Source: Dendrobates tinctorius (Eukaryota). From it: DNA of 64,000 nucleotides. The notes under the pieces are model-generated. The model made no database searches, was not told where the DNA came from, and saw only the letters and a list, made by a program, of their open reading frames with translations. The stretch covers positions 3,906,001 through 3,970,000 of the forward strand of contig NW_027361727.1 in the NCBI RefSeq assembly GCF_039654945.1, in the 5' to 3' direction. Positions 3,970-60,018 of this stretch are shown here, piece by piece. The stretch's first letter is position 1. Each line of letters opens with the position of its first letter. Both the position numbers and the translations under genes were made by a program.

Positions 3970-4029
3970 AAGATTCATGAGCTCCGATGTCTGACATGAG
4001 GAATCTGATGATAGAATTTCCCTCTAATT

Positions 4030-4435: not shown

Positions 4436-4473
4436 GAGTAGCATTGCTCTGTGAATAAGCCTCCTTATATTGG

Positions 4474-4979: not shown

Positions 4980-4981
4980 TC

Positions 4982-4999
4982 TGGCGCCCAATGTGGGAT
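4982..4999 (+). promoter_or_regulatory. Primer-binding site, tRNA-Lys(1,2) type
   Basis: tggcgcccaatgtgggat, 2 nt after the LTR, versus canonical TGGCGCCCAACGTGGGGC. Confidence 0.85.
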
Positions 5000-6849: not shown

Positions 6850-8527
6850 GTTCGTTGTCACCAGCTGGGCCAATGCCAAATCCAGACAATGTGGTGTCTC
6901 TATATCCACAGGGCACCTTCTCAAAAGTGCCAGTGCCAGCTTTGATATCAGGAGAAGAAAGTGAAAATCTCCCTACACAAAACACCACAGGTAGCCCCCC
7001 GATACAACAGCCAGCAGAGCCCACAGCTCGGGGTGCAGGAAAGGGGGAGGCAGGAGCTAAAAATGCTGAAAATGAGGAACCTACGTACCAGACAGAGCTG
7101 CCAACATTTACATCATCATCAACGCAGCCTCGGGGGGGGACATCCTAACACAAAAAGGCAACTTCTACGTGCAAACTTCAGCCAGTATGTGACCCAAACA
7201 CACAATATTACAGCTTCTCCTCTGATGAAAATGAAGAGGGAACATCATACATGCTGCCCAGTACTAGGGAAAGAAACCCACAGACACCAAGTAGGCAGGG
7301 GCAGATAGAGCCAGATCCCTTACATTATGCGCCCTTCACCCCTAGTCAGGTGTTCAGTATTCTGAATAATTCTAATCTGCCAGACCCCGATATGGACCCC
7401 ATGCCATTTTACCGAAGAATGCAGCAGAGCCAGCAAACATATACTGCGACCTGGATTGATCTCTGGTCCATAATGGAAATAAAAGCAGGTGAAGCATTCT
7501 GGCCAATCATGAAGGAACACTTCAAGCTTCTAGCAGAATTAAATGTGCACTCCTGGGAGTCAGAATCAAAGCTAATTGAGCAGCTCAGAGAGTGAGTCAA
7601 AGCCAGACACAGGGCAAGCCCTCAGCCTACATGACATGAGCCAAGACAAGACAGAGTCTGTAGAGAAGTTTCATGACAGAGTGATGCAAGTATTCCAAGA
7701 TTTAGGCTTCACTATTCATGATCAGATACACAGACAAATGTTGACACAGGCCTTTGTGCATGGACTAAGGGTCCTGTTTCATATAGCGATGCACCAGCAA
7801 TCCCGACAACAATACGACTTGGTAGGGATCGCTGGTGCGTCGATACATGGTCGCTAGTAAGCTGTCAAACATGAAGATCTCTTCAACGACGCACCAGCGA
7901 TCCCGATGATACGACCTGGTAAGGATCGCTGGTGCGTTGTCACACAGCAGCTATTCTGAATGATTCCAGCCTGCGTCCCTGAGTTCTGCGTCGCCAACTA
8001 GGTTGCTCGTCGGTGTCAAACACAGTGATGCATGCTGGCCAGCGGGATGCTGACTATGGCCCAGGACATTCGAGCACAATCAGCAATATCCAGCGGGGGG
8101 CCGGTCGCTGCTGCGTGTCACACAAAACGAGATCGCTGGCGAGATCGCTGTGGTGTCACAGAATCGGTAACGCATCAGCGATCACGCTAGCGATCTCGCT
8201 ATGTGAGACGGGGCCTTAAGAGAACCAATCAAGAAACTGCTGATAGTGGCCAGGCCTGAGTACAGGTCAATAGCAGTAGATACCCTGCTCACAGTAGCCA
8301 GAAGGATTGAGTCCCACCCAGGAGTGCGGAAGACAGCTCCTGTTATGGTGGCCACTGATGTGGAAGAGCAACCACCCTGCAGAGACAGGAGAAACATCAA
8401 GTGTTACAACTGTGGCAAACTTGGCCATTTCCAGAACCAGTGCAGAGCACCCTGCCAACCCAGGACATCACGCAGAGGAACAGGCCAAGAAAGAAACACA
8501 AGAAGCGGTGAAGAACCCCGTCCGTAG
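6850..8527 (+). pseudogene. gag: ERV gag remnant (capsid-like region and CCHC zinc knuckle), frameshifted and split by a MITE; 5' limit uncertain
   Basis: QDKTESVEKFHDRV (resembles the major homology region); AFVHGLR|EPIKKLL rejoins across the MITE; CYNCGKLGHFQNQC; ends in TAG at 8525-8527. Confidence 0.85.
7769..8216. mobile_element. Harbinger/Tourist-like MITE inserted in gag
   Basis: TAA TSD and imperfect TIRs; removing it restores GGA CTA AGA GAA CCA (GLREP). Confidence 0.85.
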
Positions 8528-9153
8528 GACAGAGGCAAGCCAGGTCCGCAAGACATCATGCCCCTGACATGTGAAACACCATCAGCGGACCCAATACCTC
8601 AAATCACCCTGAAGGTGGACGGGGGTTATCAGATCTTTCCTTGTGGACACTGGTGCAGTCAGAAGTGTGGTGAGACATGTGGAACGCCCTGACCCCAACT
8701 GACAGAATCCTCTGTTTTGTGTGGAAATTGATGGTCAAGTCAGACATTTCCAGCTTACATTACAAGCCCCTGAGCATGTGAACACAGCCAGAACACTCCA
8801 TCCTGTTCCAGTTTATGGTGGAGACCTGCCCACTCAACCTGCTGGGAGCAGACCTACTGCAGAAAGCTAAAGGTGACCAAAGTGTTCCAGGAAGATGGGA
8901 AAATGACACTTTCTCCACCCCTGACACAAGAAGAATCAATCATGCTGGCGGCCCTACAAGACCCTCAAACAACCTGTGCAAGCCTACCCAAGGAGGTGCT
9001 GGACATAGTACCCGAAAGCCTATGGTCCAAGAGAGACTTCAAGTTGCGCCAGTGCGGGTGTCACCCAAGTCTGGAACCCCGTACCCTCATAAGTCCCAAC
9101 ATCCCCTGTCCATCACCCAAAGTCGAACTGTCTCTGACCAACTGAAGGTCTAA

Positions 9154-9632
9154 GTGAACCTGCTGTTCAAGCATTGGCCAGGAAATTCAACCCAAAGGGA
9201 CCTTACCCGCTTCATGAAATGGCTGCACTGCATCCAGCTCCAGTGCCAGAGGATCATCTTGTACAAGATTCTGAAGGTGCTCCTTGAAATTTATCCAGGC
9301 CCTGGACCGGAAAACAGCCATTCAGCTCTTCAAACTGGTGCACAAATGCTGACCTGAGACCAAGCTGGAAGAAAGGAACAGCTGCTGGCCCATGCTGAGC
9401 AAAAAGAAACTGGTAAAGAAGGCATCCCAGCAAAGAGACCCCCAGTGATCAGAGCAGGTGTTAACACAGTGACCGCCTTGGTGGAGAGCAAGTAAGCTCA
9501 GCTGGACGTCATCTCTGATGAAGAGGATCCCAGCAAACGGCTTGTTTTCCTGCCGACTCTGTGCCAGAAGATGGGAGTCCCCTACTGCAATGTGAAGAGC
9601 AAGGCCAGACCGGGCCGCCTCGTCCATAGGAA
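9154..9632 (+). pseudogene. RPL7A: Processed RPL7A (60S ribosomal protein L7a/eL8) internal fragment inside ERV RT
   Basis: Degenerate translation RDLTRFMKWLHCIQLQCQRIILYKILKV; QALDRKTAIQLFKLVHK; [20 protein letters not shown]; [30 protein letters not shown] matches RPL7A; contiguous, with no introns. Confidence 0.93.
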
Positions 9633-9636
9633 TCAT

Positions 9637-12600
9637 ACAAATTCAAAGGGGGCAAGCGGGCACCATCACAACAATGTATATAATCACTGGGGGATCACTT
9701 GCATGACATGTAAAGGAATCCAATTAGAGAAAAAGACCATGCATTAGAGTAGGATCACCAGACAGAGACCAATAGGTACAAAATATAAATATATTTTATT
9801 GTTCACAAGCCAGAAATCAACACACATTTAAAAACATTTAAAAGACCCAACTAAGGATCATTTATGAACACTCCAACAAATGACAAAATATCATGCTCAA
9901 TATTTAATAATGTAGCACCTGACCGCTAATACTGAGTATTGCACAAAGAAGGATATCTACAAGTAAATGCTGCTAACATGAAGCCAAACAATCAGAGACT
10001 GTGGGAGAATACAGCCCCTATTTTGTAGAGACATGAGTGCAAGGGTTTAACCCTAACAACCACCATATGCAATGCCCATAGAGCCCAAAGGGCAAGGAAG
10101 CAGCTATACATAATACATGCACAAAATCCCAAAATAGAAATTTAGGCAAGCTGAATACGTCACCCTATATAAGTATAGGCAGGAGAAACAGTCAGTCGCC
10201 CCCTCATCTAAATAGCAGCAATGCGGTCAAAGTGATATTGAGAGTCAATGGAGGAGACCCACGCGTTCCGACACTGACAGTGTCTTTTTCAAGGTGAGCA
10301 TAACCGGCTGTTTCACCTATCGATTTATATCCCTGTAATTAATTATCATTCTTACCAGCTGGCAGCCTGAATCGGAGATACACATGTAAGTTCCTGGACG
10401 CCGGCGGCTCGGGACCCGGAACTGATCATTACCGGAGGTCAGGAGTTGTACAGCGCTTGCGCATAGTATGTAATGCAGCAAACATCCTGAGTGACAGAAA
10501 GTGGACATGCGCAGTGGAACCCCTGACCAAGAGGAATATAACGCGCTTGCGCCCATGGTGTATAAACGGAGGTATCTAGATCTATAAAGAAAGGCCACAG
10601 AGGGACACCAAAGATATAGACGGGAATCTCCAAATAAGGAGAAGAACATGCGCAGTGTATTTTTACCCGGCAGGAATGCAATACGTTTGCGCGCATATTC
10701 ACAGAGTCAGAAAAAATAGAGTTAGAGGAAAGAAGGACATGCGCAATATCCACAAGAAAGCCTTATCGGTGTTACCGCTAGCAGATCTACTGCACATAAG
10801 GTGTGAGGGCATAAATATTTAACCTCATGAATAAAGTATTTAAATACCAGCATAAATAATTTTTTTTTTTTTTTTTTACATTAATGTCCCTAGTTTACGT
10901 CCAGTATGATGTTTTCATATAAGTACCACAGTGTCCATTAATAAATACTCAATATATAAAGTTCAAGATTTATAGCACTTACGCAGGTCTATAGAGTAGA
11001 GTTTATTTCTATCCACCTTATATATTTTTTGGAATTAGCTGATAGGCAAAATAAGCCTCATTCAGACGATCATAAAGCCTATTGCAGGTGTAATATAGCT
11101 GGTTTATTTTAGTGTGCCCCTCAAGCATGAACAGATAACACTTAATCCACTACTACCACAGTATTAGAATAACCAAAGGTTAAATATTAAATCACACAAG
11201 TGTAAATATATACAACTAATTATATTTCTTAAAGAAGATCTCTTCAACTGTGCAAGATAGTAGTACACACCATTTGTTTGTAGATATCCGCGGAATTTCT
11301 TATTAATGGCATCCTCCTAAGAGGATTGCCATATGAGGTCCCAGAACTCATAACAGAGACATATTTCATTAAGGGCAAAGTTTAATCTCCATATTTAGAG
11401 GAGGGTCAGTTTTTAATATCCTTCTTAGATATATAGTTGGTCCTTCGAGCATGAACAGATAACACTTCGTTCTATACGGGCTGATTGCCGATTCCCATAC
11501 CACCACGCACAATTCTTATCTTTTATGAATTGGCTGATAGGCAAATACGCCTCACTCAAACAATCATAAAGCCTATTGCAGGTATGAAATGGCTGATTTA
11601 TTTTAGTATACCCCTCGAGCATGAACATATTCACTAATTCACTTAATTCACTAATGCCACAATGTTAAAATAATCAAGGTTAAATGTTGAATCACACAAG
11701 TGTAAATATCAACCATTAATTATATCTCCCAAGGAAGAGCTTTTCGACTGTGCAAAATTAGTAATACACATCATTTTTTATACATAGGTATTCACGGAAC
11801 TTCGTATTGTTGGATAACCATATGAAGCCCCAGGACTCTTAGGGTACCGTTACACTTAGAGATGCACCAGCGATCCCGACAACGATATGGATCGCTGGTG
11901 CATCGCCAAGTGGTCGCTAGTGAGCTGCCACACAGGCAGATCTCACCAGCGACATAGCAGGGGTCGGGGGTCGCTACTTACCTGTCAGATGCGGCGATCC
12001 TGACGTCCTCCCGCCCGGCTCCACGCGTCGCTCGTCGGCGCCACAGGAAGCCCAGCAGGAAGCTGACGACGAGAAATGGTCCAGGACGTTCTCGCGTGAC
12101 CAGCGATGAGCAGCGGGGGAGCCGGTCGGAGGTAAGTATCAGACATAGCGATATCGCTGCTGCGTCACCAAATCGGTGACGTTACAGCGATATTGCTAGC
12201 GATATTGCTATGTGTAACAGGGGCTTTGTAACAAATAGAGGCATATATCATTAAGTACAGAGCTTAATCTCCAAATTTAGAGGATCAGTTTTTAATATCC
12301 TTCTTGGGTATATAGTTGGTCCCTAGAGCATGAACAGATAACACTTCGTTCTATACGGGTTAATTGCCCATTCCCATATCACCGCAATATTAGGGCCAAA
12401 ATGGCCAAAAACAGAATCGCACAAATGTGAATGAGAAACACTGATTATATTCTTGAAAAAAATCTTTTGATAAAGCAATGATTAAGGTACGAACAATTCT
12501 AAGCATACTAACAAAATTTGTTGATAATAATGATCTCCATAAGAGGATAGCCATATTAAACCCATCAGGGCCTATATCAGATAGAAACAATTAAAATTGA

Positions 12601-13750
12601 AGGAAATTTTTTATATAGTCTCCAAAATTTAAAGAGAATTAGTTGTTCAGATATCCTTCTTTGGTATACGCTTATTCCCTTCCTCTAGAGCATTACATTT
12701 GGCTCAGTAGTTACAAGCTTGAGACAATACCAGATAGAGAATAATCAGGCTTAATATTCATGACCCAAGACTGTAAAGAATGTTATAACAGAGCCAAGTG
12801 ACCACAATGTCCGTATCCACATATAGCCTGTCCCATACCACAGAATGAATAAATTCATCTAACTGAACAGATACTGGACTTATATAGATATCGTTGTTTA
12901 TAGAGAGCTCCACATTTTGAAGATCATAAGCGAATCCCTATAGATAAAGGAATACATGCACAGTCCAAAATATATATATAAATGTAATGTTTGTAGTACA
13001 TATTTCTTCCAAAGGAAAAGAAAGGAAGCCTCAAGTCCACTCCTGCTTCACATGCTGAAACTTGGAAAAGGGGATTTACCTAGAAAAAAGGAAAAAAATA
13101 AAGGAAATAAGGAAGGGGAAGGAAAACAGAGATATAAATCGATAGGTGAAGCAGAGCCGGTTATGCTCACCTTGAAAAAGACACTGTCAGTGTCGGAACG
13201 CGTGGGTCTCCTCCATGGACTCTCAATAACACTTTGACCGCATTGCTGCTATTTAGATGAGGGGGCGACTGACTGTTTCTCCTGCCTATACTTATATAGG
13301 GTGACGTATTCAGCTTGCCTAAATTTCTATTTTGGGATTTTGTGCATTTATTATGTATAGCTGCTTCCTTGCCCTTTGGGCTCTATGGGCATTGCATATG
13401 GTGGTTGTTAGGGTTAAACCCTTGCACTCATGTCTCTGCAAAATAGGGGCTGTATTCTCCCACAGTGTCTGATTGTTTGGCTTCATGTTAGCAGCATTTA
13501 CTTGGAGATATCCTTCTTTGTGTAATACTCAGTATTAGCGGTCAGGTGCTACATTATTAAATATTGAGCATGATATTTTGTCATTTGTTGGAGTGTTCAT
13601 GAATGATCCTTAGTTGGGTCTTTTAAATGTTTTTAAATGTGTGTTGATTTCTGGCTTGTGAACAATAAAATATATTTATATTTTGTACCTATTGGTCTCT
13701 GTGTGGTGATCCTACTCTAATGCATGGTGGTCTTTTTCTCTCTAATTGGA
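9637..13750. mobile_element. 4.1-kb non-coding insertion with about 610-bp inverted ends; probable non-autonomous Penelope-like element
   Basis: 15-bp TSD gtccataggaatcat (9622-9636 and 13751-13765); inverted arms about 9719-10331 and 13131-13750, each carrying CTTGAAAAAG-hairpin-GGAACGCGT and a downstream AATAAA; internal repeats of about 495 bp. Confidence 0.7.
11841..12226. mobile_element. MITE of the same family as 7769-8216 and 36947-37372
   Basis: Shared gatgcaccagcgatcccgacaac and atcgct repeats; it interrupts one copy of the 495-bp internal repeat. Confidence 0.75.
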
Positions 13751-16736
13751 GTCCATAGGAATCATCATGCAGTCCCAGCTTTTCTCGATCAAGAGGAAGA
13801 CTGTGAAAGGAGAACCAGCCAGGTTCAGAATGGTGCATGACCTGAGGGCTGTGAACGAAGCCACCGTGTTTGAAACCCCAATTGTGCCAAATCCGCACAT
13901 TCTGTTGTCAAATGTACCAGCCACAGCAACAGTGCTCACGGTGATTGATCTGTCCAATGCTTCCTTCAATGTTCCCCCTTCACATGGACGACCTGTTCCT
14001 GTTTGCCTTCACGCACCAGGGGGGTGCAGAACACATGGGCAGTGATGCCCCAGGGGGGCCAGAACAGCCCTTCACAGTTCACCAAAGCATTGTCCTCCAT
14101 CCTCGTCAACTGTATTGCAGAGCATGGAGAAGTCATCAACATTGCTACCTGCACAGCCCTTTCCTTGTCTCTTCTACTCTACCTGGCGGAGCAGCAACGC
14201 AAGTTCTTGAAAAACAAAGTCCAGTGGTGTCAAAAGCAAGTTACGTTCCTGGGACAATGTATTGCCCGCCAGACAAAACGTTTGACAGATGACCGCCACT
14301 GTGGAGAAGATGGCTCCCCCAACAACTCTGAAGATACTGCAGGCCTTCCTTGTTCCAGTTTCATATTGCAGAACTTGGATCCCTGATGCTTCAGTCTTAA
14401 TGCAGCCTCTGTACGATTGCGTCAATGCAACCCTGTTCCTCCTGTCATATACAGCCTTCATCTCATACAGGAAACTGAAAGACTCCATAGTCTCTGCGCC
14501 AGCTCTAGGCCTAGGCCTCCCTGACTACGAGAAGCCATTCTGTCTTTACCAAATGGAAAAAGAAGGTAATGCTATTGGCATCCTAAAACAGACCCACGGA
14601 GGAAAACAGAGGCCTCTAGGATACTTCTCGCCCGCCTGGATCCGGTTGCAAGGGGGGCCCCCTCCTGCATGGTGTTTGCAGTGCACGCCCTCCAGGACAA
14701 GGCTGCTGACATCATTCTTGGACAACCACTGGAGATCCTGGCTCCGCACGACATCTCAGCAATTCTCTACCAGACCCAGCCAAAACATCTCTCCACCGCC
14801 CGGCATCTTCGCCTCCAGTGCTCTCAGCTGTTGCCTGACTCTACTCCCACTTCCAAGGGGGATGCCGATACGTCTTCAACCACCACTCTACTCCCACTCC
14901 CAAGGGGGTATGCGGATACGGACTCTTCAGAACAAAATCTGTAGGATACCATAGATGGCTCCAGATTTGCAGATGATGAAGGAAGATTCCACAGGGGATG
15001 TGCAGTGACCAGCAATCAAGAAATCCTATGGTCCAGAAGTTTGTCGCCTAGCTTGTCAGCCCAAGAAGCGGAACTGATAGCACTGACGAAGGCCTGCCAG
15101 ACTGCGAAGGACAAAACTGCAAATGTCTATACCGATTCCAGGTACTCGCATGGCATAGCACATGACTTTGGACCCATCTGGGCTGCAAGGGTCTTCATCA
15201 CAGCAAGTGGAACAACAGTGAAGCATCATGGAGCCATCAGAGACCTGCTGGATGCTCTCCAACTTCCAAAAATGGTGGCTGTGTTAAAAGTCAAGGCACA
15301 TGGAAAACTGAACACAGTAGAGGCACGGGGCAACAACATGGCAGACGTGGCAGCCTAAGAAGCAGCCAAAGGAAGACAATATGGAGAAGTGGGAGAGGTC
15401 GTAGAGCCGGACGGCTACTACATGACGACTGAAGACAAGAAAACCTGACAAAATGACGTCCTGGGATCTGTTCAAGAAGTTGCAGGACCAGACTCCAAAG
15501 GAGCAGAAGGAAAGCTGGATGCTGAAGGGACAACATATGAAGGAAGAAGGGCAAAAGCATTGGACTCCAAAACCCTGTCTACCTCAAAGCATTGGACTCC
15601 AAAACCTGGACTCCAAAACCCTGTCTACCTCAAAGTATGTACCCTATGGTGGTTCAATGGGCACATGGGCCCCCGCACAGATTGAAGACACAGATGAATG
15701 ATCTGATTGGACTCCTTCCTTAACAGACAAATTTACCAGCAGCTGTTTGACCTCAGACAAATGCAACTCTGGACGAATGGGAAGAAGTTCCCCCACATCA
15801 TCTGGTCAGAAGCTTTCCCAGTAAGGAACCGGACTACTGCCAAGAAGCTGCTCTCAGTAATAGTGTGCAGATACGGGGTTCCAGAAGTGATAGAGAGTGA
15901 TCAGGGACTGGCATTCACAGCAAACCTGACATAAGAGATCTGGTCAGCAGTAGGGTCAGACTTAGGCCTACACACTTCCCACCATCCCTCAACATAGACT
16001 AAGTGGGACACTTAAGAGCAGCATGTTAAAAATTGCCCAAGAGACAAACAAACCATGGCATTAGACCCTCCCAATCGCCCTTTTTAGTGTAAGGCATATT
16101 CCCATAGGCCCAGAAAAAGCTGTCACCTATATGAAATTTTATTTGGATCTAGTCCCAGGTCCCTCAGCAGTTGACTATGCAATATGATACTTTGTCTGTT
16201 TGTGTAATTGGACTCACCAAGAAACTTGCTAATGTCCATTCTCGAGTTTTTTGTTCATTGCCAGATCCAGAATCGGTACCTGGTATGCATGTCCTGAAGC
16301 CAGGAGACCGAGTGTTGGTGAAAAAAGTTTGTAAGGAGAGCATTCGATCCCAGATTTGATGGCCCTTCTCCAAGTGCTGCTGATGACACCATCATGGAGG
16401 GAAGACCCACTTGGATCCATGCATCGCATTGCAAGAAAGCTCTCATACCAGAAGATACACCTAAGCGGAATGATGCAGTGGATGCCCTACCTGACGGAAT
16501 AAATGACCTACCTGATGGAGAATACACACCGCTGACTACATAGACTGCTAACTAAGAGACTTTGATCACAATACAATGAACCCCCGTTAGGGACAGATCT
16601 CCTGACCGCCCATTTGCAAAAGTCTGTACGGAGGGAGGGTGTATGCACTAGGCGTGCGTCAGCCCACTGGCAGCATAAGAATTGCAGCACTTTGGCACAG
16701 GAGCAGGATTAGGGCAAGTGATATCTAAGGGGGGAT

Positions 16737-28304: not shown

Positions 28305-28447
28305 CTAGAATAAATAAAATGATGGAAAATATGTGACATATCCCATTTACAGGACAGACTCTGGCTCTACTGTCACTTTACCCCCGAGGGTGGTTTGCAT
28401 GTTAATGACCGGGCCAATTTTTACAATTCTGTCCACGGTCCCTTAAT

Positions 28448-28722
28448 AAAAAAAAATGGGATAAAAAGATGGAATAACTCTGCGCTGCTTGAAAGATAGA
28501 AGTACATGTGGATATTCAGATGAAAAAGTGGCTATATTCAACGCGTTTCAGAGTACTATGACTCCTTCAAAGTGTATACTTTTGTGGTTTCCTGATGATG
28601 GTCGTAGTACTCCGAAACGCGTTGAATAAAGACACTTTTTCATCTGAATATCCATTTGTACTTCTAGCTTTCAAGCAGTGACGAGTGAATCCACCTTTTT
28701 ATCCCTTTTTTTTTTTTTTTTT
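28448..28722. mobile_element. Divergent (5'-to-5') pair of Penelope-like pLTR fragments with a hammerhead motif
   Basis: Arms of about 125 bp; CTGATGA (28592-28598)...tactccGAAACGCGTTGAATAAA. Confidence 0.72.
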
Positions 28723-31700
28723 ACTCTGGCTGGTCACGAGGGGACTGGAGGATCTGCAGCAGCTAATATTTCTATGAGCCTGTGTTTGGGCTCTATCTAG
28801 TGAGTAAAATCTGTGCTGAGCTCACGGTGACTTTTGAGCTGCGGTGACTTCGGTAAGATCCCCGCTAGCACCGTGAGCGCTCACGGTGCTAGCAGGGATC
28901 TGATCGCAGCTCAGCCCGGCTGGGAACACAGCCCAGTGGCCGGAGGTAACCTCGATGACGTCACCACCGGTCTCTGAGGCTGCACTCTCAGCAGCTCATT
29001 CACCAGTGGTTTTCAGCCGGGACGGTCGCATGTTGGCACCGTCCAGGTTGAAAACTATTTATCCCCCAGACATGGATTACAGCGTGGGAAAGAATGATGG
29101 ACAGGTATGGTATATTGTTGGTTTTTTACTTTATATTTATTACAGGAGATTGAGAGCTTCGCTGGGATTTGGCGATGCAGTAAGTATGGTTTATTTGAGA
29201 TTAATAAAGGAGTCTGTTTCATTTTTTTCAAATAAAGGACTTTATTCTGGCTGTTTCTTTATTTACAATACAATTATAGGATTAGTAATGGATGGGTGCC
29301 TTATTGACGCCTCTCCATTACTAAGCCTTGGGCTTGATGTCACCTGACAATACAAAGGTGACATCAACCCCACAAATATTACCCCACTTGCCACCTCTAC
29401 AGGGTGAGTGCGAAGAGCCGGGCAAAGCGCCAGAATTGGGGCATCTAATAGATGTAGCCCACAGCTGCCCAGGCTGGGAGGGGTCAATATCCATGGCCCC
29501 TTACCAGCCTGAGAATACCAGCCCCCCCAGCTGTGAGCTTTAGCAAGGCTGGTTGTCAAAAATGGGGGGGACCCCACGCCTTTTTTTAAATTATTTAAAT
29601 AATTAAAAAAAACAGCATGGGGACCCCTCTATTCTTGATAACCGGCCTTGCTGAAAGCTGAGGGTTGCAGCCCCCAGCTGTGAGCTTTGTCTGGCTGGTT
29701 ATCAAAAATAGGTGGAACCCACGCCAGGTTTTCTTTTTAACTACTGTATTTATTTACGACGCGGGAGCAGCAGATAAATACTCCCATCCGCGGCTCCTGC
29801 TGTCACTGTTATTAGCAGCAGCAGGGGTAGGCTGATGGGGATAATAGTCCCATCAGCCACCGCCTACTGTCTCTTTAACCCCTTCACCCCCAAGGGTGGT
29901 TTGCACGTTCATGACCGGGCCAATTTTTACAATTCTGACCACTGTCCCTTTATGAGGTCATAACTCTGGAACGCTTCCATTGATCCCGGTGATTCTGACA
30001 TTGTTTTCTCGTGACATATTGTACTTCATGTTAGTGGTAAAATTTCATTCAAATAACTTGCGTTTATTTGTGAAAAAAATGGAAATTTGGCAAAAATTTT
30101 GAAAATTTCGCAATTTTCCAACTTTGAATTTTTATGCCCTTAAATCACAGAGATACGGCACACAAAAAACTTGATAAGTAACATTTCCCACATGTTTACT
30201 TTACATCAGCACAATTTTGGAACCAAAATTTTTTTTTGTTAGGAAGTTATAAGGGTTAAAAGTTGACCAGCGATTTCTCATTTTTACAACACCATTTTAT
30301 TTTTAGGACCACATCACATTTGAAGCCACTTTGAGGGGTCTATATGATAGAAAATACCCAAAAGTGACTCCATTCTAAAAACTGAACCCCTTAAGGTGCT
30401 CAAAACCACATTCAAGAAGTTTATTAACCCATTAGGTGCGTCACAGGAATTTTTTTGAATATTTAAAAAGAAATGAACATCTAACTTTTTTCACAAAAAA
30501 AATACTTCAGGTTCAATTTTTTTTATTTTACCAAGGGTAACAGGAGAAATTGGACTGCAAAAGTTATTGTGAAATTTGTCCTGAGTAGGCTGATACCTGA
30601 TTTGTGGGGGGGAACGACTGTTTCGGCGCATGGCAGAGCTCAGAATGGAAGGAGCGCCGTTTGACTTTTTCAATGCAAAATTGGCTGGAATTCAGATCGG
30701 ACGCCATGCCACGTTTGGAGAGTCCCTGATGTACCTAAACAGTGGAAACCCCCTACAAGTGACCCCATTTTGGAAACTAGACCCCCCAAGGAACTTATCT
30801 AGATATGTGGTGAGAACTTTGAACCCACAAGGGCTTTACAGAAGTTTATAACGTACAGCGGTACAATTAAAAAATCATATTTTTTCCACAAAAATGATCT
30901 TTTCACCCCAATTTTTATTTTCCCAAGGGTAACAGGACCCTATAAGTTATTGTGCAATTTGTCCTGAGTACGCTGATACCCCACATGTGGGGGTAAACCA
31001 CTATTTGGGCGCATGGCAGAGCTCGGAAGGGAAGCAGCGCCATTTGACGTTTTTGGCTGGAATTGAGATCGGACACCATGTCGCGTTTGGAAAACTCCTG
31101 ATGTACCAAAACAGTGGAAACCCCCCACAAATGACACCATTTTGGAAACTAGACCCCCTAAGGAACTTATCTAGATGTGTGGTGAGCACTTTGAACCCCC
31201 CCAGTGCTTCACAGAAGTTTATAACGCCCGGGCGTGAAAATAAAAAATTCTTATTTTTTCCACAAACATGATCTTTTAGTCACCATTTTTTTATTTTCCC
31301 AAGGGTACCAGGAGAAATTGGACCCCAAAAGTTGTTGTCCAATTTGTCCTGAGTATGCTGATACCCCATATGTGGGTGAAAACTACTGTATGGGCACACG
31401 TCGGGGCTCGGAAGGGAAGTAGTGACGTTTTGGTATGCAGACTTTGATGGAATGGTCTGCGAGTGTCATGTTGCCTTTGGAGAGCCCCTAATGTACCTAA
31501 ACAGTGGAAACCCCCCACAAATGACCCCATTTTGAAAACTAGACCCACTAAGGAACTTATCTAGATGTGAGGTGAGCACTTTGAACCCCCAAGGGCTTCA
31601 CAGAAGTTTATAATGCCAGGGCATGAAAATAAAAAAAATCGTATTTTTTCCAGAAACATGATCAATTAGTCCCCAATTTTTTCATTTTCCCAAGGGTAAC

Positions 31701-32310
31701 AGGAGAAATTGGACCCCAAAAGTTGTTGTCCCATTTGGCCTGAGTACGCTGACACCCCATATGTGGGAGAAAACTACTGTATGGACACACGTCGGGGCTC
31801 GGAAGGGAAGCAGTGACGTTTTGAAATGCAGACTTTGATGGAATGGTCTGCGGGTGTCATGTGCGTTTGGAGAGCCCCTGATGTACCTAAACTATTGAAA
31901 CTCCCCACAAGTGACCCCCTTTTGGACACTAGACCCCCCACGGAACTTATCTAGATGTGTGGTGAGCACTTTGAACCCCCAAGTGCTTCACAGAAGTTTA
32001 TAACACTCGGACGTGAAAATAAAAAAAATCATTTTTTTCCACAAAAATGATATTTTTGCCCCCAATTTTTTATTTTCCTAAGGGTAACAGGAGAAATTGG
32101 ACCCCAAAAATTGTTTTGCAATTTGTCCTGAGTAGGCTGATACCCTACATGTGGGGGTAAAACACTGTTTGGGCGCATGGCAGAGCTTGGAAGGGAAGGA
32201 GCACCATTTGACTTTTTCAACTCAGAATTGGCTGGAATTGAGATCAGACGCCATGTTGCATTTGGAGAGCCCCTGATGTGCCCAAACAGTGGAAACCCCC
32301 AATTATAACT

Positions 32311-40969: not shown

Positions 40970-41840
40970 CTGTAAAGACAGTGTGAGGTTTATGGAGCCC
41001 ATCCAGCCAAAGGCACAATCTGCTGGCAGCCAGAGCAGCTTATAAATCCAATATATATTTTTAGAGAGAGTGGCGCTGCCAGGATGATCCAGATCCAAGC
41101 ATGTTATAACCAACAACCTCCGCGATCAGTGATGTGTCGCCAATATAACACGGTTTTGGCTACAAGGGGGGGGGTTGGTTTTATGGAGATAAAGCAGATT
41201 TGAGTGTCTCATTATGTCAACAGGTTCGCTTTCTTATAAGCCCAAATGGCACCAAACATCTTATGCCATAGGAGCCATCAGGGCTATTAATGCGGAAAGC
41301 GCAGCTCCCAGCCCAGCTCTGGCTGTCTCATCCTGCCCCCGTCAGGCAACTTTTTCATGGTGCAATGAAAAGTTCTGCTATTCTCTATGTTGTGTTTTTA
41401 TTCCCTGCCATTTTCCACATCTTTGCTTGATCTCAGTGAATGGAAACATTTCACAGACTGAAATTCATCGCCTAGTGATTGTATCTCTTTATAACAGCGG
41501 CTGTGCCCTCTGCGGACCCTCTGACGGCAGCCATCATGCTGTCACTTTGATAGCTTAAAAAAAAAATTCTGTCAAGTCTGATAGAAGAGTAGACGGAGGC
41601 TCCAAATGCAGCCTGTGACAGCAGTGTGAACAGAGCCGAAGGGTTCTTTACGTAACACCTATACCATTCCAGAAAAAGCCCCAACGCTGAGCTGCACGAG
41701 AGAAATATCGGTCTCCGACACTCATGGGTGCAGCATCTGTATCATCGCTTGTCCTGACAAGATCATGTGGATTTCTATAATTAACTTGTAATTGATCAAT
41801 TATGGCTTATCTGATAATTAAATGATTAACGGATTGTAAA

Positions 41841-42528
41841 CTACTCCAATTACCCGGACAGGCCAGAGCCAGGCGCTGGGCTTAGTGTCAAGATGGATGT
41901 AGTACAGAGCTCAGGAGGAAGGAACAACCTGTAGTCCATTAATGAGGGCATCAACCTCCCACTGTATAGTATAGAGAATATACATGTCATCCCCTGAGGA
42001 AGAAGTTTTTAACTTTGAAACGCGTTGGGAAATAAATGTTTTAAAGCACACAACTTGTGAGGAGTGATGGTCTGGCAGCGCACGGCTAATCCATAAAAAT
42101 TCCTTCTTTGAATCTACTCCAATTACCCGGACAGGCCAGAGCCAGGCGCTGGGCTTAGTGTCAAGATGGATGTAGTGCAGAGCTCAGGAGGAAGGAACAA
42201 CCTGTAGTCCATTAATGAGGGCATCAACCTCCCACTGTATAGTATAGAGAATATACATGTCATCCCCTGAGGAAGAAGTTTTTAACTTTGAAACGCGTTG
42301 GGAAATAAATGTTTTAAAGCACACAACTTGTGAGGAGTGATGGTCTGGCAGCGCACGGCTAATCCATAAAAATTCCTTCTTTGAATCTACTCCAATTACC
42401 CGGACAGGCCAGAGCCAGGCGCTGGGCTTAGTGTCAAGATGGATGTAGTGCAGAGCTCAGGAGGAAGGAACAACCTGTAGTCCATTAATGAGGGCATCAA
42501 CCTCCCACTGTATAGTATAGAGAATATA
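41841..42528 (+). repeat. 273-bp head-to-tail repeat (2.5 copies), with one type I hammerhead motif per full unit
   Basis: Units start at 41841, 42114 and 42387 and are nearly identical. Confidence 0.9.
41990..42030 (+). ncRNA. Minimal type I hammerhead ribozyme motif (second copy at 42263-42303)
   Basis: tccc-CTGAGGA-a-gaagtt-ttt-aacttt-GAAA-c-gc-GTT-ggga: stem I tccc/ggga, 6-bp stem II, palindromic stem III AACGCGTT; activity not shown. Confidence 0.7.
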
Positions 42529-42587
42529 GAGGGGTGCAATAATTGGGGTTCCCCTTGATAAGTCAAAGAATAGAGAAATTTTATATA

Positions 42588-44125
42588 CAGTTGTGCGCAA
42601 AAGTTTACATACCCCGGCAGAATTTTTGCTTTCTTGGCCTTTTTTCAGAGAATATGAATGATAACACCAAAACTTCTTCCCCACTCATGGTTAGTGGTTG
42701 GGTGACACCAATTATTGTCAAACTACTGTGTTTTCTCTCTTTAAATCATAATGACAACCCAAAACATCCAAATGACCCTGATCAAAAGTTCACATACCCC
42801 ATTTCTTAATACCGGGTATTGCCTCCTCTAACATCAATGACAGCTTGAAGTCTTTTGTTGTAGTTGTGGATGAGGTTCTTTATTTTCTCAGATGGTAAAG
42901 CTCCCCACTCTTCTTGTCAAAACGCCTCCAGTTCCTGTAAATTCCTGGGTTGTCTAGCATGAACTGCGCGCTTGAGATTTCCCCAGAGTGGCTCAATACA
43001 TTGCGGTCAGGAGATGGAGATGGCCTTTCAGAACCTTCACTTTGTTCTGCTGTAGCCAATGACAGGTCGACCTGACCTTGTGTTTTGGATCGTTGTCATG
43101 TTGGAACATCCAAGTACGTCTCACGCGCAGCTTCCAGGCTGATTCATTTTTCCTTCATCTTTAACCAAGTTTCCTCTGCCTTTGTAGCTCACATATCCCA
43201 AAACATCAGCGATCCACCTCCGTGCTTTACAGTAGGAATGGTGTTCCTTTCATCATAGGTCCTGTTGACCTCTCTCCAAATGTAACGTTTATGGTTGTGG
43301 CCAAAAAGTTCAATTTTGGTCTCATCACTCCAAATTTCCTTGTTCCAGAAGTTTTGAGGTTTGTCTCTGTGCTGTTTTGCATATTGTAGGTGAGATGCTT
43401 TGTGGCATTTGCGCAGTAATGGCTTTCTTCTGGCGACTCGACCATGCAGCCCATTTTTCTTCAAGTGCCTCCTTATTGTGCATCTTGAAACAGCCACACC
43501 GCTAGTTTTCATACATTCCAGTATTGCAGCTGATGTTATTTGTGGGTTTTTCTTTGCATCCCGAACAATTTTCCTGGCAGCTGTGGACATTTTTGTTGGT
43601 CTACCTGACCATGGTTTTGTTCTCACAAATCCCCTGATTTTCCATTTGTTAGTCACAGTTTGAACGCTGCTGACTGGCATTATCAATTTCTTGGATATCT
43701 TTTTGTATCCCTTTCCTATTTTATTCACAATTCAGAAACGTCAGTGGCTCGATGAAAGATGCAAGAGTCTGTTTGGATCCCAGAAACTCACTCAGTGTTT
43801 ATGCACACACACTGATTACAGGCAAACAGGTCACAGGTGAGGATGTTACCTTTAGTAACCAGTCAAACCCTTCTGTGTCAGCCTCTGTGCATGTTCTTAG
43901 GCCAAAATCACCAGGGTAGGTGAACTTTTGTTCAGGGTCATTTGGATGTTTTGGGTTGTCATTATGATTTAAAAAGAGAAAACACAGTAGTTTGAGAATA
44001 ACTGGCTTCACCGAACCACTAACCATGAGTGGAGAAAAAGTTTTGGTGTTATCATTCATATTCTCTGACAAAAAGCAAAGTAAGCAAAAATTCTACAAGG
44101 GTATGTAAACTTTTGAGCACAACTG
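42588..44125 (-). mobile_element. Decayed Tc1 element (IR/DR type)
   Basis: TIR cagttgtgc(g/t)caaaagtttacataccc; partial transposase ORF 43189-43728 (GRPTK, WSDETKIELFG, TVKHGGGS); C-terminal part deleted and frameshifted. Confidence 0.9.
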
Positions 44126-49363: not shown

Positions 49364-50970
49364 CAGTGGGGCAAAAAAGTATTTAGTCAGTCAGCAATAG
49401 TGCAAGTTCCACCACTTAAAAAGATGAGAGGCGTCTGTAATTTACATCATAGGTAGACCTCAACTATGGGAGACAAACTGAGAAAAAAAAAATCTAGAAA
49501 ATCACATTCTGTTTTTTTTTCCATTTTATTTGCATATTATGGTGGAAAATAAGTATTTGGTCAGAAACAAAATTTCATCTCAATACTTTGTGATATATCC
49601 TTTGTTGGCAATGACAGAGGTCAAACGTTTTCTGTAAGTCTTCACAAGGTTGCCACACACTGTTGTTGGTATGTTGGCCCATTCCTCCATGCAGATCTCC
49701 TCTAGAGCAGTGATGTTTTTGGCTTTTCGCTTGGCAACACGGACTTTCAACTCCCTCCAAAGGTTTTCTATAGGGTTGAGATCTGGAGACTGGCTAGGCC
49801 ACTCCAGGACCTTGAAATGCTTCTTACGAAGCCACTCCTTCGTTGCCCTGGTGGTGTGCTTTGGATCATTGTCATGTTGAAAGACCCAGCCACGTTTCAT
49901 ATTCAATGCCCTTGCTGATGGAAGGAGGTTTGCACTCAAAATCTCACGATACAGGGCCCCATTCATTCTTTCATGTACCCGGCTCAGTCGTCCTGGCCCC
50001 TTTGCAGAGAAACAGCCCCAAAGCATGATGTTTCCACCACCATGCTTTACAGTAGGTATGGTGTTTGATGGATGCAACTCAGTATTCTTTTTCCTCCAAA
50101 CACGACAAGTTGTGTTTCTGCCAAACAGTTCCAGTTTGGTTTCATCAGACCATAGGACATTCTCCCAAAACTCCTCTGGATCATCCAAATGCTCTCTAGC
50201 AAACTTCAGACGGGCCCGGACATGTACAGGCTTAAGCAGTGGGACACGTCTGGCACTGCAAGATCTGAGTCCATGGTGGCGTAGTGTGTTACTTATGGTA
50301 GGCCTTGTTACATTGGTCCCAGCTCTCTGCAGTTCATTCACTAGGTCCCCCCGCGTGGTTCTGGGATTTTTGCTCACCGTTCTTGTGATCATTCTGACCC
50401 CACGGGGTGGGATTTTGCGTGGAGCACCAGATCGAGGGAGATTATCAGTGGTCTTGTATGTCTTCCATTTTCTAATTATTGCTCCCACAGTTGATTTCTT
50501 CACTCCAAGCTGGTTGGCTATTGCAGATTCAGTCTTCCCAGCCTGGTGCAGGGCTACAATTTTGTTTCTGGTGTCCTTTGACAGCTCTTTGGTCTTCACC
50601 ATAGTGGAGTTTGGAGTCAGACTGTTTGAGGGTGTGCACAGGTGTCTTTTTATACTGATAACAAGTTTAAACAGGTGCCATTACTACAGGTAATGAGTGG
50701 AGGAAAGAGGAGACTCTTAAAGAAGAAGTTACAGGTCTGTGAGAGCCAGAAATCTTTATTGCTTGTTTCTGACCAAATACTTATTTTCCACCATAATATG
50801 CAAATAAAATGAAAAAAAAAACAGACAATGTGATTTTCTGGATTTTTTTTTCTCAGTTTGTCTCCCATAGTTGAGGTCTACTTATGATGTAAATTACAGA
50901 CGCCTCTCATCTTTTTAAGTGGTGGAACTTGCACTATTGCTGACTGACTAAATACTTTTTTGCCCCACTG
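49364..50970 (-). mobile_element. Intact Tc1 (DD34E) transposon with long TIRs
   Basis: TA TSD; TIRs of about 205 bp beginning cagtggggcaaaaaagtatttagtcagtc; 1607 bp. Confidence 0.97.
49580..50602 (-). CDS. Tc1 transposase, 340 aa, open frame
   Basis: Paired-like HTH, GAPRK linker, WSDETK, QHDND and SPDLNPIEN; 34 residues between the second D and E. Confidence 0.95.
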
Positions 50971-55492: not shown

Positions 55493-56767
55493 TTAGAATA
55501 ACGTATGTGAATGAAAAATTAATTTCATTACTGCAAGGGCAGAAATTAAACACTCAGGTTCTTTAAGTCTTGAACTCTTCTTTATTGAGGCTATCAGTCA
55601 CAGACATCATTCTGGTTCAGGTGCCGCTGATCACTTGCTAAACTATAGGCAATGTGGTGTCTCCAGCACTGGAGGAGCTCGTCGTCTCACACCAGAACTG
55701 TCATATCTGTTTGTCTTGCAAGTCCAGTCCACAACAATGAGCCTGTGACATCGGTAAGCCGTCCCGTCTCCCCGGGCAGCCACACGGCCGCTCTCCCTCC
55801 AGACAGCGGACCACAGGGTGGAAAGGGAAATAAATGCTAATTGGATACTGGGTGAGGTGAGGGGCACCACGGACAACTGCCACACACAGTACCCACGCAC
55901 TGTATCCCGCAGCCCCCGCCACACAGCTTTCCACGGATCCTGAATGCATGTGCGAAACAGTTTAAACCTTCCTTAAAAACACATACTGTATATGAGCAAT
56001 TCAGCAACACCTGGCGATTCTCATCTCTAGGGTACAAACACGACCAGCTAGGATGATGCAGATATGGAGGAGACAGACTACAGCAGATGGTCAGGACGCC
56101 TCCAGCATTACTCGGATGACACTTCTTCAGGTTCTGTAGTATCTAGTACTAGGGTTCGAATCAAGGAAACGTTATCACACCTAGAATAAAAGCTTCACAC
56201 AACCAGTGCAGATGACGTGTAACCCTATAGCTTCCCTGCTGCCGGCTGGTAACAGATTACATGGAAACCACAGTCTCACGATGTGTACGATAAATTATCT
56301 GGGCTTAGTCGTGTCTGTTCCCAGGAAAAGTTGAAGACCCCTCTACTGACACCACCACACTAGGCTCCTAAATGGTAAATCTGCAAAATTAAGCCATTAA
56401 ATGCTATGGGTGGGGATATGCCAATGCACGATCAGGAGTCTGGGAGAGCAGGGAGACCACCCACATTCATGTGAATATTGAGATTTCCCACCAGTGTCAC
56501 ATTATACACAACACAGGGTGTCGTCTCAACACGAAATATCATCTCTTATCAAAAAGTAATACCCTGCAGGTCTCAGTGGAAATCTTTAGGTATTTGCCCC
56601 GCAGCACATATAAGACACAAGGACAGGTGCGTCACATTGGTGGGTAGATGCTGGTGAGGTTCATTCCCAGGCACTCTTTATGTCAGAGCAGCAATGCACA
56701 TAACTAGAGGCTACTACAGGTGCAGATCCTGTATAGGACACACCTGACCCCCATTATACAGTATATA

Positions 56768-57563
56768 CTGATCCCAAGTTACTTCCTGTATTATACTCCA
56801 GAGCTGCACTCACTATTCTGCTGGTGCAGTCACTGTATACATACATTACATTACTGATCCTGAGTTACATCCTGTATTATACCCCAGAGCTGCACTCACT
56901 ATTCTGCTGGTGCAGTCACTGTATACATACATTACATTACTGATCCTGAGTTACATCCTGTATTATACTCCAGAGCTGCACTCACTATTCTGCTGGTGCA
57001 GTCACTGTATACATACATTACATTACTGATCCTGAGTTACATCCTGTATTATATTCCAGAGCTGCACTCACTATTCTGCTGGTGCAGTCACTGTGTACAT
57101 ACATTACATTACTGATCCTGAGTTACATCCTGTATTATACTCCAGAGCTGCACTCACTATTCTGCTGGTGCAGTCACTGTGTACATACATTACATTACTG
57201 ATCCTGAGTTACATCCTGTATTATATTCCAGAGCTGCACTCACTATTCTGCTGGTGCAGTCACTGTGTACATACATTACATTGCTGATCCTGAGTTACAT
57301 CCTGTATTATACTCCAGAGCTGCACTCACTATTCTGCTGGTGCAGTCACTGTGTACATACATTACATTGCTGATCCTGAGTTACATCCTGTATTATACTC
57401 CAGAGCTGCACTCACTATTCTGCTGGTGCAGTCACTGTGTACATACATTACATTGCTGATCCTGAGTTACATCCTGTATTATACTCCAGAGCTGCACTCA
57501 CTATTCTGCTGGTGCAGTCACTGTGTACATACATTACATTACATTGCTGATCCTGAGCTACAT
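56768..57563. repeat. 86-bp satellite, array 1
   Basis: actgatcctgagttacatcctgtattatactccagagctgcactcactattctgctggtgcagtcactgtgtacatacattacatt, about 9 copies. Confidence 0.95.
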
Positions 57564-59139: not shown

Positions 59140-60018
59140 GGTATTATACTCCAGAGCTGCACTCACTATTCAGCTGGGGCAGTCACTATGTACATACATT
59201 ACATTACTGATCCTGAGTTACATCCTGTATTATACTCCAGAGCTGCACTCACTATTCTGCTGGTGCAGTCACTATGTACATACATTACATTACTGATCCT
59301 GAGTTACATCCTGTATTATACCCCAGAGCTGCACTCACTATTCAGCTGGGGCAGTCACTGTGTACATACATTACATTACTTATACATTACTGCGCTCACT
59401 ATTCTGCTGGTCCAGTCACTGTGTACATACATTACATTACTGATCCTGTACTGATCCAGAGTTATATCCTGTATTATACTCCAGAGCTGCACTCACTATT
59501 CTGCTAGTGCAGTCACTGTGTACATACATTACATTACTGATCCTGAGTTACATCCTGTATTATACTCCAGAGCTGCACTCACTATTCTGCTGGTGCAGTC
59601 ACTGTGTACATACATTACATTACTGATCCTGCGTTACATCCTGTATTATACTCCAGAGCTGCACTCACTATTCTGCTGGTGCAGTCACTGTGTACAGACA
59701 TTACATTACTGATCCTGAGTTACATCCTGTATTATACTCCAGAGCTGCGCTCACTATTCTGCCGGTGCAGTCACTGTGTACATACATTACATTACTGATC
59801 CTGAGTTACATCCTGTATTATACTCCAGAGCTGCGCTCACTATTCTGCTGGTGCAGTCACTGTGTACATACATTACATTACTGATCCTGAGTTACATCCT
59901 GTATTATACTCCAGAGCTGCACTCACTATTCTGCTGGTGCAGTCACTGTGCACATACATTACATTACTGATCCTGAGTTACATCCTATATTATACTCCAG
60001 AGCTGCGCTCACTATTCT
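59140..60018. repeat. 86-bp satellite, array 2 (same family and orientation)
   Basis: About 10 copies. Confidence 0.95.

What the first reader, a model, noticed from the sequence alone, without database searches (positions are those of the whole stretch)
41841..42528. Retrozyme-like array: 273-nt head-to-tail monomers, each with a minimal hammerhead ribozyme, antisense in a NAV2 intron
Seen: 2.5 almost identical 273-bp units. Each full unit has tccc-CTGAGGA-a-gaagtt/aacttt-GAAACGCGTT-ggga followed by AATAAA. Known: tandem monomers of roughly 150-350 nt with one type I HHR whose short palindromic stem III works as a dimer are the architecture of metazoan non-LTR retrozymes and newt satellite 2, which self-cleave to unit-length and circular RNA and are thought to be mobilised by Penelope-like elements. 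Inference: this may be an undescribed anuran retrozyme family, with two HHRs able to excise a 273-nt monomer. Caveats: the cleavage triplet is GUU (weak). The A-B-A-B-A layout could instead be a 131-bp pLTR piece (B) with a duplicated 142-bp host segment (A).
Basis: partly seen in the sequence, partly recalled or inferred. Interest (0 to 1): 0.85.

Follow-up and report, generated by a model that had tools for sequence, protein, structure and literature searches.

The report
Ribozyme repeat fragment with duplicated host DNA
The tandem array is real, but it is not a self-cutting mobile "retrozyme" family: it is a 131-base piece of a common frog jumping repeat carrying a small hammerhead motif, and the 142 bases of ordinary host DNA next to it were duplicated along with it.

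Summary
Window 41841-42528 contains 2.5 copies of a 273-bp unit with one mismatch. Each full unit carries a minimal type I hammerhead (HHR) with a palindromic helix III, followed by AATAAA.

When contigs of public runs were laid on the locus:
- Segment A (142 bp) is covered by one contig, continuous with the unique left flank.
- Segment B (131 bp, with the HHR) belongs to a dispersed family, with summed depth about 5,600-15,000 against 8.5 for the flank.
- A related frog (about 97% identical) has a contig that reads left flank, one A, right flank, with no B.

So A is host DNA and B is a truncated piece of a repeat of the Penelope-like-element (PLE) min-HHR type. The likeliest history is one reverse-transcription insertion with an unusually long 142-bp target duplication (A-B-A), then one more duplication of the 273-bp unit.

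The two co-oriented HHRs could in principle release a 273-nt RNA containing host sequence, but no listed run that holds the stretch is on record as RNA.

The scan has noted many HHR/PLE insertions elsewhere in this genome. None was found that resembles this unit by sequence.

This is an ordinary kind of element in a slightly unusual arrangement, so interest is low.

The parts
41841..41982 (.). A1: host segment, copy 1 (142 bp). It carries the one derived base of the array, at 41904.
   Evidence: Depth equals the left flank (8.5, one contig) in DNA contigs of the same species. It is continuous with the flank in three species. The outgroup reads G at 41904 (table 3).
41983..42113 (+). B1: 131-bp fragment of a dispersed HHR-bearing repeat of the PLE min-HHR type, truncated at its 5' side.
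   Evidence: Summed contig depth is 5,600-7,000 against 8.5 for the flank. There are many variant contigs, and loose ends show other copies continuing upstream with different sequence.
41990..42030 (+). Minimal type I hammerhead 1. Helix I is 41990-41993 with 42027-42030. The core CUGAGGA is 41994-42000, with a bulged A at 42001. Helix II is 42002-42007 with 42011-42016. GAAA is 42017-42020. The palindrome ACGCGU is 42020-42025. The predicted cut is after U 42026.
   Evidence: The features match the PLE min-HHR description in PMC4209133.
42031..42036 (+). AATAAA, 5 nt after the predicted cut site. It is repeated at 42304-42309.
   Evidence: The same layout is seen in the unrelated HHR element at 28592-28632.
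42114..42255 (.). A2: host segment, copy 2.
   Evidence: Identical to A3 and one difference from A1.
42256..42386 (+). B2: second copy of the repeat fragment, identical to B1. It carries hammerhead 2 at 42263-42303, with the predicted cut after 42299.
   Evidence: Depth is 3,900-15,000.
42387..42528 (.). A3: host segment, copy 3, joined to the unique right flank.
   Evidence: In organism B the same A end is joined to the same right flank (record 17).
42589..43728 (-). Context only: a Tc1/Sleeping-Beauty-like transposon whose end starts at TA|CAGTTG, 60 bp to the right of the array. It is not part of the array.
   Evidence: Pfam gives HTH_Tnp_Tc3_2 and HTH_SB for the ORF at 43189-43728. Depth is 3-6e5. 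It is already present at this site in organism B (record 17).

Best explanation
Segment B is a 131-bp, 5'-truncated copy of an abundant frog repeat that carries the minimal hammerhead typical of Penelope-like-element (PLE) terminal repeats and of the non-autonomous elements derived from them. It was probably inserted by target-primed reverse transcription into single-copy host DNA. The two strand nicks fell at AT-rich spots 142 bp apart, at 41840/41841 and 42528/42529, so the host stretch between them (A) was duplicated as an unusually long target-site duplication, giving A-B-A. The two A copies then served as direct repeats for one unequal exchange or replication slip, which added another 273-bp A+B unit and gave A-B-A-B-A. 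The 273-bp 'monomer' is therefore a chimera of host DNA and transposon fragment, not a mobile unit.

Shown: the array itself, the HHR motif, that A is not dispersed, that B is dispersed, and the B-free site in a related species.

Inferred: PLE-type enzymes as the inserting machinery, the order of the two steps, a 4-nt TATA microhomology at the A|B joint, and any ribozyme activity.
For: (contigs of four public runs laid on 41565-42944):
- In DNA contigs of the same species (X1), the left flank and A have the same depth (8.5) and come from one 2,640-nt contig that runs from the flank through A and stops 26 nt into B.
- No other contig at least 85% alike lies on A.
- B sums to 5,600-15,000, with many variant contigs. 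For example, 27 contigs carry C at 42016 and 13 carry an extra A behind 42282.
- Loose ends show that other copies continue differently upstream of B's first bases (X5, before 42257) and downstream of 42031 and 42309.
- Organism B (X7, record 17, 560 nt, about 97% identical) runs 41565-41926 and then directly 42478-42609. That is flank, one A (minus 5 nt), right flank, without B.
- Organism C (X8) also covers the flank|A joint and the A|right-flank joint, and shares only the HHR core of B.

Age: the copies differ at 1 of 688 positions, against about 3% divergence between the two species. The array is therefore younger than the species split, and the outgroup base at 41904 shows that the one difference is derived.

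HHR type: there is an extra base between A9 and G10.1, a 6-bp helix II, a palindromic 15.1-16.1 stretch and a short open helix I. These are the features listed for PLE min-HHRs in PMC4209133.

Insertion mechanism: PLE target duplications vary in length because the distance between first- and second-strand nicks varies (PMC8557442), and the PLE endonuclease prefers AT-rich DNA (PMC11167929). Both array borders are AT-rich.

One X1 contig joins 41991 to 42262 on opposite strands. This is a head-to-head arrangement of another B-family copy, as is typical of PLE insertions.
Against: A 142-bp target duplication is about ten times longer than those the scan's earlier notes report for such insertions in this genome (14-15 bp), and I found no published PLE example of that length.

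The parent element of B was not recovered, so its link to a PLE with an RT/GIY-YIG ORF rests on the ribozyme type alone.

Logan contig depth is one flat figure per contig. It shows that A is not a dispersed repeat, but it cannot confirm that A is present three times in that individual.

No contig was seen that bridges the B|A joint, so the 2.5-copy structure rests on the assembly alone.

A B-free site could also arise secondarily, by recombination between A copies.
Confidence: 0.75

Rival explanations
1. One-step origin. The whole B-A-B insert arose in a single retrotransposition event. For example, after the first cDNA and the copy of A were made, the regenerated nick at the same A border primed a second round of reverse transcription on the same RNA, or the enzyme switched templates between the RNA and the target.
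For: B1 and B2 are identical with identical end points, and the A copies differ at one base only, so nothing separates the two steps in time. The PLE enzyme nicks and extends both strands and starts reverse transcription at defined internal sites (PMC11167929). PLE insertions are typically partial tandems (PMC8557442).
Against: No such host-interleaved tandem is described in the papers read. Identical end points follow equally well from a simple duplication of the 273-bp unit between the two A repeats, which needs no new mechanism.
Confidence: 0.12
2. Assembly artefact. The real locus has fewer units, for example A-B-A, and the extra 273 bp comes from mis-assembly of reads or of two alleles.
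For: No short-read contig bridges the B|A or A3|right-flank joints. The single A/G difference at 41904 could be an allelic difference, since the X1 contig reads G.
Against: 688 bp is well within single long reads. Contigs drop repeats and low-depth branches, so their absence proves nothing (stated). An artefact would still leave B as an insertion in host DNA.
Confidence: 0.07
3. One reading: a genuine non-LTR retrozyme family with 273-nt monomers, inserted here as a multimeric cDNA copied from a circular RNA.
For: The layout is head-to-tail units, each with a type I HHR. The size lies in the published 150-450 bp range (PMC7229834). The array starts and ends at arbitrary points of the unit, as rolling-circle copying would give.
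Against: Half of the unit (A) is not repeated anywhere else in DNA contigs of the same species, and it is present once, between the same flanks, in a related species that lacks B. No target duplication flanks the array. The circular fold of the unit is no more stable than shuffles (-63.4 against -64.5 +/- 4.5 kcal/mol). The HHR is the minimal PLE type, not the canonical loop-loop type of described retrozymes. No listed run that holds the stretch is on record as RNA.
Confidence: 0.03
4. The array is ancestral and organism B lost it. Recombination between A copies collapsed A-B-A-B-A back to a single A in the related species.
For: Recombination between direct repeats leaves exactly flank-A-flank, which cannot be told apart from an empty site.
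Against: The copies are far more alike (1 difference in 688) than the two species are (about 3%). An old array would therefore need continual homogenisation. Organism C also shows both flank|A joints.
Confidence: 0.03

Closest known systems
Minimal hammerhead ribozymes of Penelope-like elements (Cervera & de la Pena 2014, PMC4209133; about 9,000 such motifs reported in Xenopus tropicalis)
   Same: It has the CUGANGA and GAAA cores, an extra base between A9 and G10.1, and a long (6-bp) helix II. Helix III exists only as a palindrome (ACGCGU) that can pair between two copies. Helix I is short and open. The motif is carried by a dispersed repeat with many sequence variants.
   Different: This copy has G-U instead of the conserved G10.1-C11.1 pair, while about half of the family depth has C. 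The triplet is GUU. No PLE ORF or full pLTR is attached here, only a 131-bp fragment.
Metazoan non-LTR retrozymes (Cervera & de la Pena 2020, PMC7229834; vertebrate survey by Li, Clavereau & Pollet 2026, bioRxiv 10.64898/2026.07.22.740005)
   Same: Head-to-tail units a few hundred bp long, each with one type I HHR. The GC content is low. The link to PLE terminal repeats is the same.
   Different: In a retrozyme the whole unit is the mobile, multi-copy sequence. Here 142 of the 273 bp are single-copy host DNA. The HHR is the minimal type, not the canonical loop-loop type. No RNA evidence was found.
Retrotransposon insertions with long target-site duplications, followed by unequal exchange between the duplicated copies
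   Same: Host segment, insert, host segment, with exact borders and AT-rich nick sites. The extra unit is what recombination between the two direct repeats produces.
   Different: The 142-bp duplication is far longer than the 14-15 bp noted for related insertions in this genome.

Membership tests
Metazoan non-LTR retrozyme | Head-to-tail repeats of about 150-450 bp, each with one type I hammerhead | tested here: met
   Period 273, 2.5 copies, with one HHR per full unit.
Metazoan non-LTR retrozyme | The whole monomer is the repeated, mobile unit, present at many loci | tested here: not met
   A (142 bp) is covered by a single contig continuous with the unique flank, and only B is multi-copy. 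A related species has A once, without B.
Metazoan non-LTR retrozyme | Canonical type I HHR with closed helix I and loop 1 - loop 2 contacts | tested here: not met
   Helix I is 4 bp and open, and helix II is 6 bp with a bulged base. This is the minimal PLE type. There is no Rfam hammerhead hit.
Metazoan non-LTR retrozyme | Unit-length linear and circular RNA in cells | tested here: inconclusive
   No listed holder of the stretch is on record as RNA. Three small runs of the same species that were guessed to be RNA hold none of its words. Only contigs were available, so RNA ends cannot be seen.
Metazoan non-LTR retrozyme | Target-site duplication flanking the whole array | tested here: not met
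   Only chance 6-mers are shared between the two flanks. Instead, the duplicated sequence is A itself.
PLE minimal hammerhead (min-HHR) | Conserved core CUGANGA ... GAAA with an NUH cleavage triplet | tested here: met
   CUGAGGA at 41994-42000, GAAA at 42017-42020, GUU at 42024-42026.
PLE minimal hammerhead (min-HHR) | [quoted passage not shown] | tested here: met
   A 42001 is unpaired in the fold. The feature is listed in PMC4209133.
PLE minimal hammerhead (min-HHR) | G10.1-C11.1 base pair | tested here: inconclusive
   This copy has G42002-U42016. Among family contigs, C at 42016 makes up 3,218 of 6,201 depth.
PLE minimal hammerhead (min-HHR) | Palindromic 15.2-16.2 / loop 3, so that helix III forms only between two copies | tested here: met
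   ACGCGU is self-complementary. Two 46-mers cofold into the double hammerhead at -21.5 against 2 x -7.9 kcal/mol. In the 325-nt tandem transcript that fold lies 5.8 kcal/mol above the MFE.
PLE minimal hammerhead (min-HHR) | Located in the terminal repeat (pLTR) of an element encoding RT and a GIY-YIG endonuclease | not testable with these tools
   None of the 10 ORFs scanned against Pfam (of the 27 of at least 120 aa) matches a PLE protein. The rest of the genome could not be searched, so the parent element of B was not recovered.
PLE minimal hammerhead (min-HHR) | Self-cleavage (weak, as dimers) | not tested
   This needs in vitro transcription of a two-HHR construct.
PLE-type insertion | 5' truncation, AT-rich target, variable-length target duplication, often a tail or an inverted arm | tested here: inconclusive
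   Truncation is supported by loose ends. The borders are AT-rich. The duplication is 142 bp, which is unusually long. No tail or inverted arm is present at this locus, though another family copy is seen head-to-head (table 5).

The most novel reading that the evidence does not exclude
The locus is a retrozyme caught at birth. A PLE terminal-repeat fragment with its hammerhead, together with a long target duplication and one more duplication, has placed single-copy host sequence between two co-oriented ribozymes. If the + strand is transcribed and the HHR pair cuts, a 273-nt RNA that is half host sequence could be released, circularised and become a new non-autonomous element. A variant of this reading is that the B-A-B structure was made in one step, by repeated priming at the regenerated nick. 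That would be a concrete route from single PLE fragments to tandem HHR arrays.
Probability: 0.08. Interest if true: 0.6.

Novelty: new member of a known kind. Interest (0 to 1): 0.22.

Why it matters
It matters mainly as a caution. A tidy tandem array with one hammerhead per unit looks exactly like a retrozyme, yet half of each unit here is plain host DNA. Copy number of each half and an outgroup empty site are therefore needed before a retrozyme family is named.

There is also a modest positive point. The locus shows that a PLE-type fragment can come to flank host sequence with two ribozymes through a long target duplication. That is one conceivable way for new HHR-delimited units to arise, and it is relevant to the recent proposal that animal retrozymes derive from PLE terminal repeats (bioRxiv 10.64898/2026.07.22.740005).

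Tried and rejected
- Rfam at E<=10 on 41000-43500 and at gathering score on the whole window gave no hammerhead or other ribozyme hit. This is uninformative for minimal HHRs.
- A search for a target duplication flanking the whole array found only 6-mers.
- The circular fold of the 273-nt unit is -63.4 kcal/mol against shuffles at -64.5 +/- 4.5, so there is no viroid-like stability.
- BLAST of A, B and the unit against the window found no other copy; only the HHR core matches weakly at 28539-28630.
- An exact-pattern scan of metagenome contigs with the HHR gave 0 hits.
- A look-up of earlier scan findings by sequence gave 0. The word look-ups for 'NAV2' and for long Penelope target duplications gave nothing useful.
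- Pfam on the ten ORFs scanned found only Tc1-type transposases and no PLE RT or GIY-YIG domain.
- The NAV2 intron and antisense context was not verified.
- RNA expression could not be judged. No listed holder is on record as RNA, and all runs laid were contigs, which cannot show RNA ends or strand.
- No family consensus was built.

Full report
**1. The observation**

Tandem Repeats Finder reports a single array at 41841-42528 with period 273, 2.5 copies, 99% matches and no indels. A direct comparison shows one difference in 688 bp: position 41904 is A in copy 1 and G in copies 2 and 3.

By its borders the array splits into A (142 bp, three copies) and B (131 bp, two copies), giving A-B-A-B-A. 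The joints with the flanks and between A and B are sharp, with no shared bases.

- helix I: UCCC at 41990-41993 pairs with GGGA at 42027-42030
- core CUGAGGA at 41994-42000, followed by a bulged A at 42001
- helix II: 6 bp, 42002-42007 with 42011-42016, UUU loop
- GAAA at 42017-42020
- the self-complementary ACGCGU at 42020-42025
- U17 at 42026

The predicted cut sites, after 42026 and 42299, are 273 nt apart. AATAAA follows 5 nt later.

A generic minimal-hammerhead descriptor finds only these two sites in the 64-kb window on both strands, and none in 200 shuffles. Rfam finds no hammerhead even at E<=10. That is expected for a motif without a closed helix III. The NAV2 intron context was not checked.

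**2. What the two halves are**

In DNA contigs of the same species (run X1):
- The left flank and A have the same depth, 8.5. Both come from one 2,640-nt contig that runs from the flank through A and stops 26 nt into B.
- No other contig at least 85% alike lies on A.
- B sums to 5,600-7,000 in copy 1 and 3,900-15,000 in copy 2, with many variant contigs. For example, 27 contigs carry C at 42016 and 13 carry an extra A behind 42282.
- Loose ends show that other copies continue with different sequence upstream of B's first bases and downstream of 42031 and 42309.
- For scale, the Tc1-like transposon that begins at 42589 (Pfam) sums to 3-6 x 10^5.

Depth summed over contigs is not a copy number, but the contrast between one contig and very many is plain. 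A is not a dispersed repeat, and B is.

**3. The empty site**

Run X7 is from another organism that is about 97% identical in the flank. It has a 560-nt contig (record 17) that matches 41565-41926 and then goes directly on to 42478-42609. The three A copies are identical there, so this reads as left flank, one A (lacking 5 nt), right flank and the first 21 nt of the Tc1 element, with no B.

A third, more distant organism (X8) also covers the flank|A joint and the A|right-flank joint. Of B it shares only the hammerhead core at 85% or better.

The copies in the window differ at 1 of 688 positions, while the two species differ by about 3%. The outgroup has G at 41904, so the single difference is a derived change in copy 1. 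The array is therefore younger than the species split.

A is thus orthologous host DNA, and B arrived later. A collapse of an old array by recombination between A copies would give the same contig. However, it would require continual homogenisation of the array, and it is contradicted by A being single-copy.

**4. What B is**

The hammerhead has the traits listed for the minimal hammerheads of Penelope-like elements (PLEs) in PMC4209133:
- a base between positions 9 and 10.1
- a long helix II with a bulged base at its 5' end
- a helix III that exists only as a palindrome, so that two copies must pair
- a short open helix I

The conserved G10.1-C11.1 pair is G-U in this copy. About half of the family depth has C at 42016.

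Two isolated 46-nt copies cofold into the double hammerhead at -21.5 kcal/mol, against 2 x -7.9 for the monomers. In the 325-nt tandem transcript the double-hammerhead fold lies 5.8 kcal/mol above the minimum. That makes it possible but not favoured.

One contig joins 41991 to 42262 on opposite strands. This is a head-to-head arrangement of another family copy, and such arrangements are typical of PLE insertions (PMC8557442).

None of the ten ORFs scanned against Pfam matches a PLE protein, and the parent element could not be recovered with the tools at hand. The assignment of B to a PLE or a PLE-derived non-autonomous element therefore rests on the ribozyme type and this one arrangement.

**5. 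How the array most likely arose**

PLE target duplications vary in length because the distance between first- and second-strand nicks varies (PMC8557442). The PLE enzyme also prefers AT-rich DNA and can nick and extend both strands (PMC11167929). Both borders of A are AT-rich.

The simplest history has two steps:
- One target-primed reverse transcription of a 5'-truncated family RNA between nicks 142 bp apart gave A-B-A.
- One unequal exchange or replication slip between the two A copies then added a further 273-bp unit.

Two details suggest that some family copies also have TATA before B's first base. The X1 contig ends at 42008, so the 30-mer 41979-42008 is shared with other copies. There is also a small depth excess in the last few bases before B copy 2. 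This points to a 4-nt microhomology at the A|B joint. That is inference only.

A 142-bp duplication is unusually long. Earlier notes of this scan report 14-15 bp for related insertions in this genome (not checked by me).

A one-step origin, with repeated priming at the regenerated nick, cannot be excluded. Nor can an assembly error in the number of units, because no short-read contig bridges the B|A joint.

**6. Comparison with known systems**

Metazoan non-LTR retrozymes are tandem units of 150-450 bp with canonical type I hammerheads. They are dispersed in many copies and expressed as linear and circular RNA (PMC7229834). A 2026 preprint found them in all seven amphibians it sampled, with 57 families in Xenopus, and relates them to PLE terminal repeats.

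This locus has the layout of a retrozyme but fails the defining test that the whole unit is the repeated element. Its ribozyme is the minimal PLE type. No target duplication flanks the array. The circular fold of the unit is no more stable than shuffled sequence. No listed run that holds the stretch is on record as RNA.

I therefore file it as a fragment of a PLE-type min-HHR repeat with duplicated host DNA, not as a retrozyme.

**7. Novelty and score**

The kind is known and the family-level claim is refuted, so the finding is ordinary. The unusual points are the very long target duplication and the resulting pair of co-oriented hammerheads around host sequence.

The most novel reading not excluded is that this is a nascent HHR-delimited unit, or that it shows a one-step route to tandem arrays. 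I give that about 8%.

The scan has many earlier notes on hammerhead and PLE-type insertions elsewhere in this genome. None resembled this unit by sequence.

Noticed in passing
window 28445-28718: Two head-to-head arms of 118 nt, 87% complementary, with A-run and T-run outer ends. The right arm carries another minimal hammerhead-like motif (CTGATGA ... GAAACGCGTT, then GAATAAA) at 28592-28632, and the left arm carries a decayed mirror copy. It looks like a PLE-type two-armed insertion of a different family. It shares only the 3' half of the HHR and the AATAAA with segment B.
   Followed up: partly
window 42031-42036, 42304-42309 and 28626-28631: AATAAA lies 4-5 nt after the predicted hammerhead cut site in two otherwise unrelated HHR-bearing repeats. 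This suggests a conserved pairing of ribozyme and poly(A) signal in these frog elements.
   Followed up: no
window 30519-32198: A tandem array with a 390-bp period, 4.3 copies and 82% matches. It has no Rfam match at gathering score. I did not check whether it is one of the roughly 400-nt non-coding tandem retroelements noted elsewhere in this genome.
   Followed up: no
window 42589-43728 and 49580-50602: Tc1/Sleeping-Beauty-like transposons. One is a decayed copy starting 60 bp right of the array, already present at that site in the related organism B. The other has an intact-looking 340-aa transposase ORF with HTH_SB, HTH_Tnp_Tc3_2 and DDE_3. The family is extremely abundant in two frog species (summed contig depth 3-6e5).
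   Followed up: partly
window 41991 / 42262 (joint seen in a contig of run X1): One DNA contig joins these two B positions on opposite strands. Another copy of the B family elsewhere in the genome is therefore arranged head-to-head near its 5' end.
   Followed up: no
window 56766-57542 and 59141-60018: Two arrays of the same 86-bp unit, with 9 and 10.4 copies at 98% and 87% matches, lie about 1.6 kb apart.
   Followed up: no
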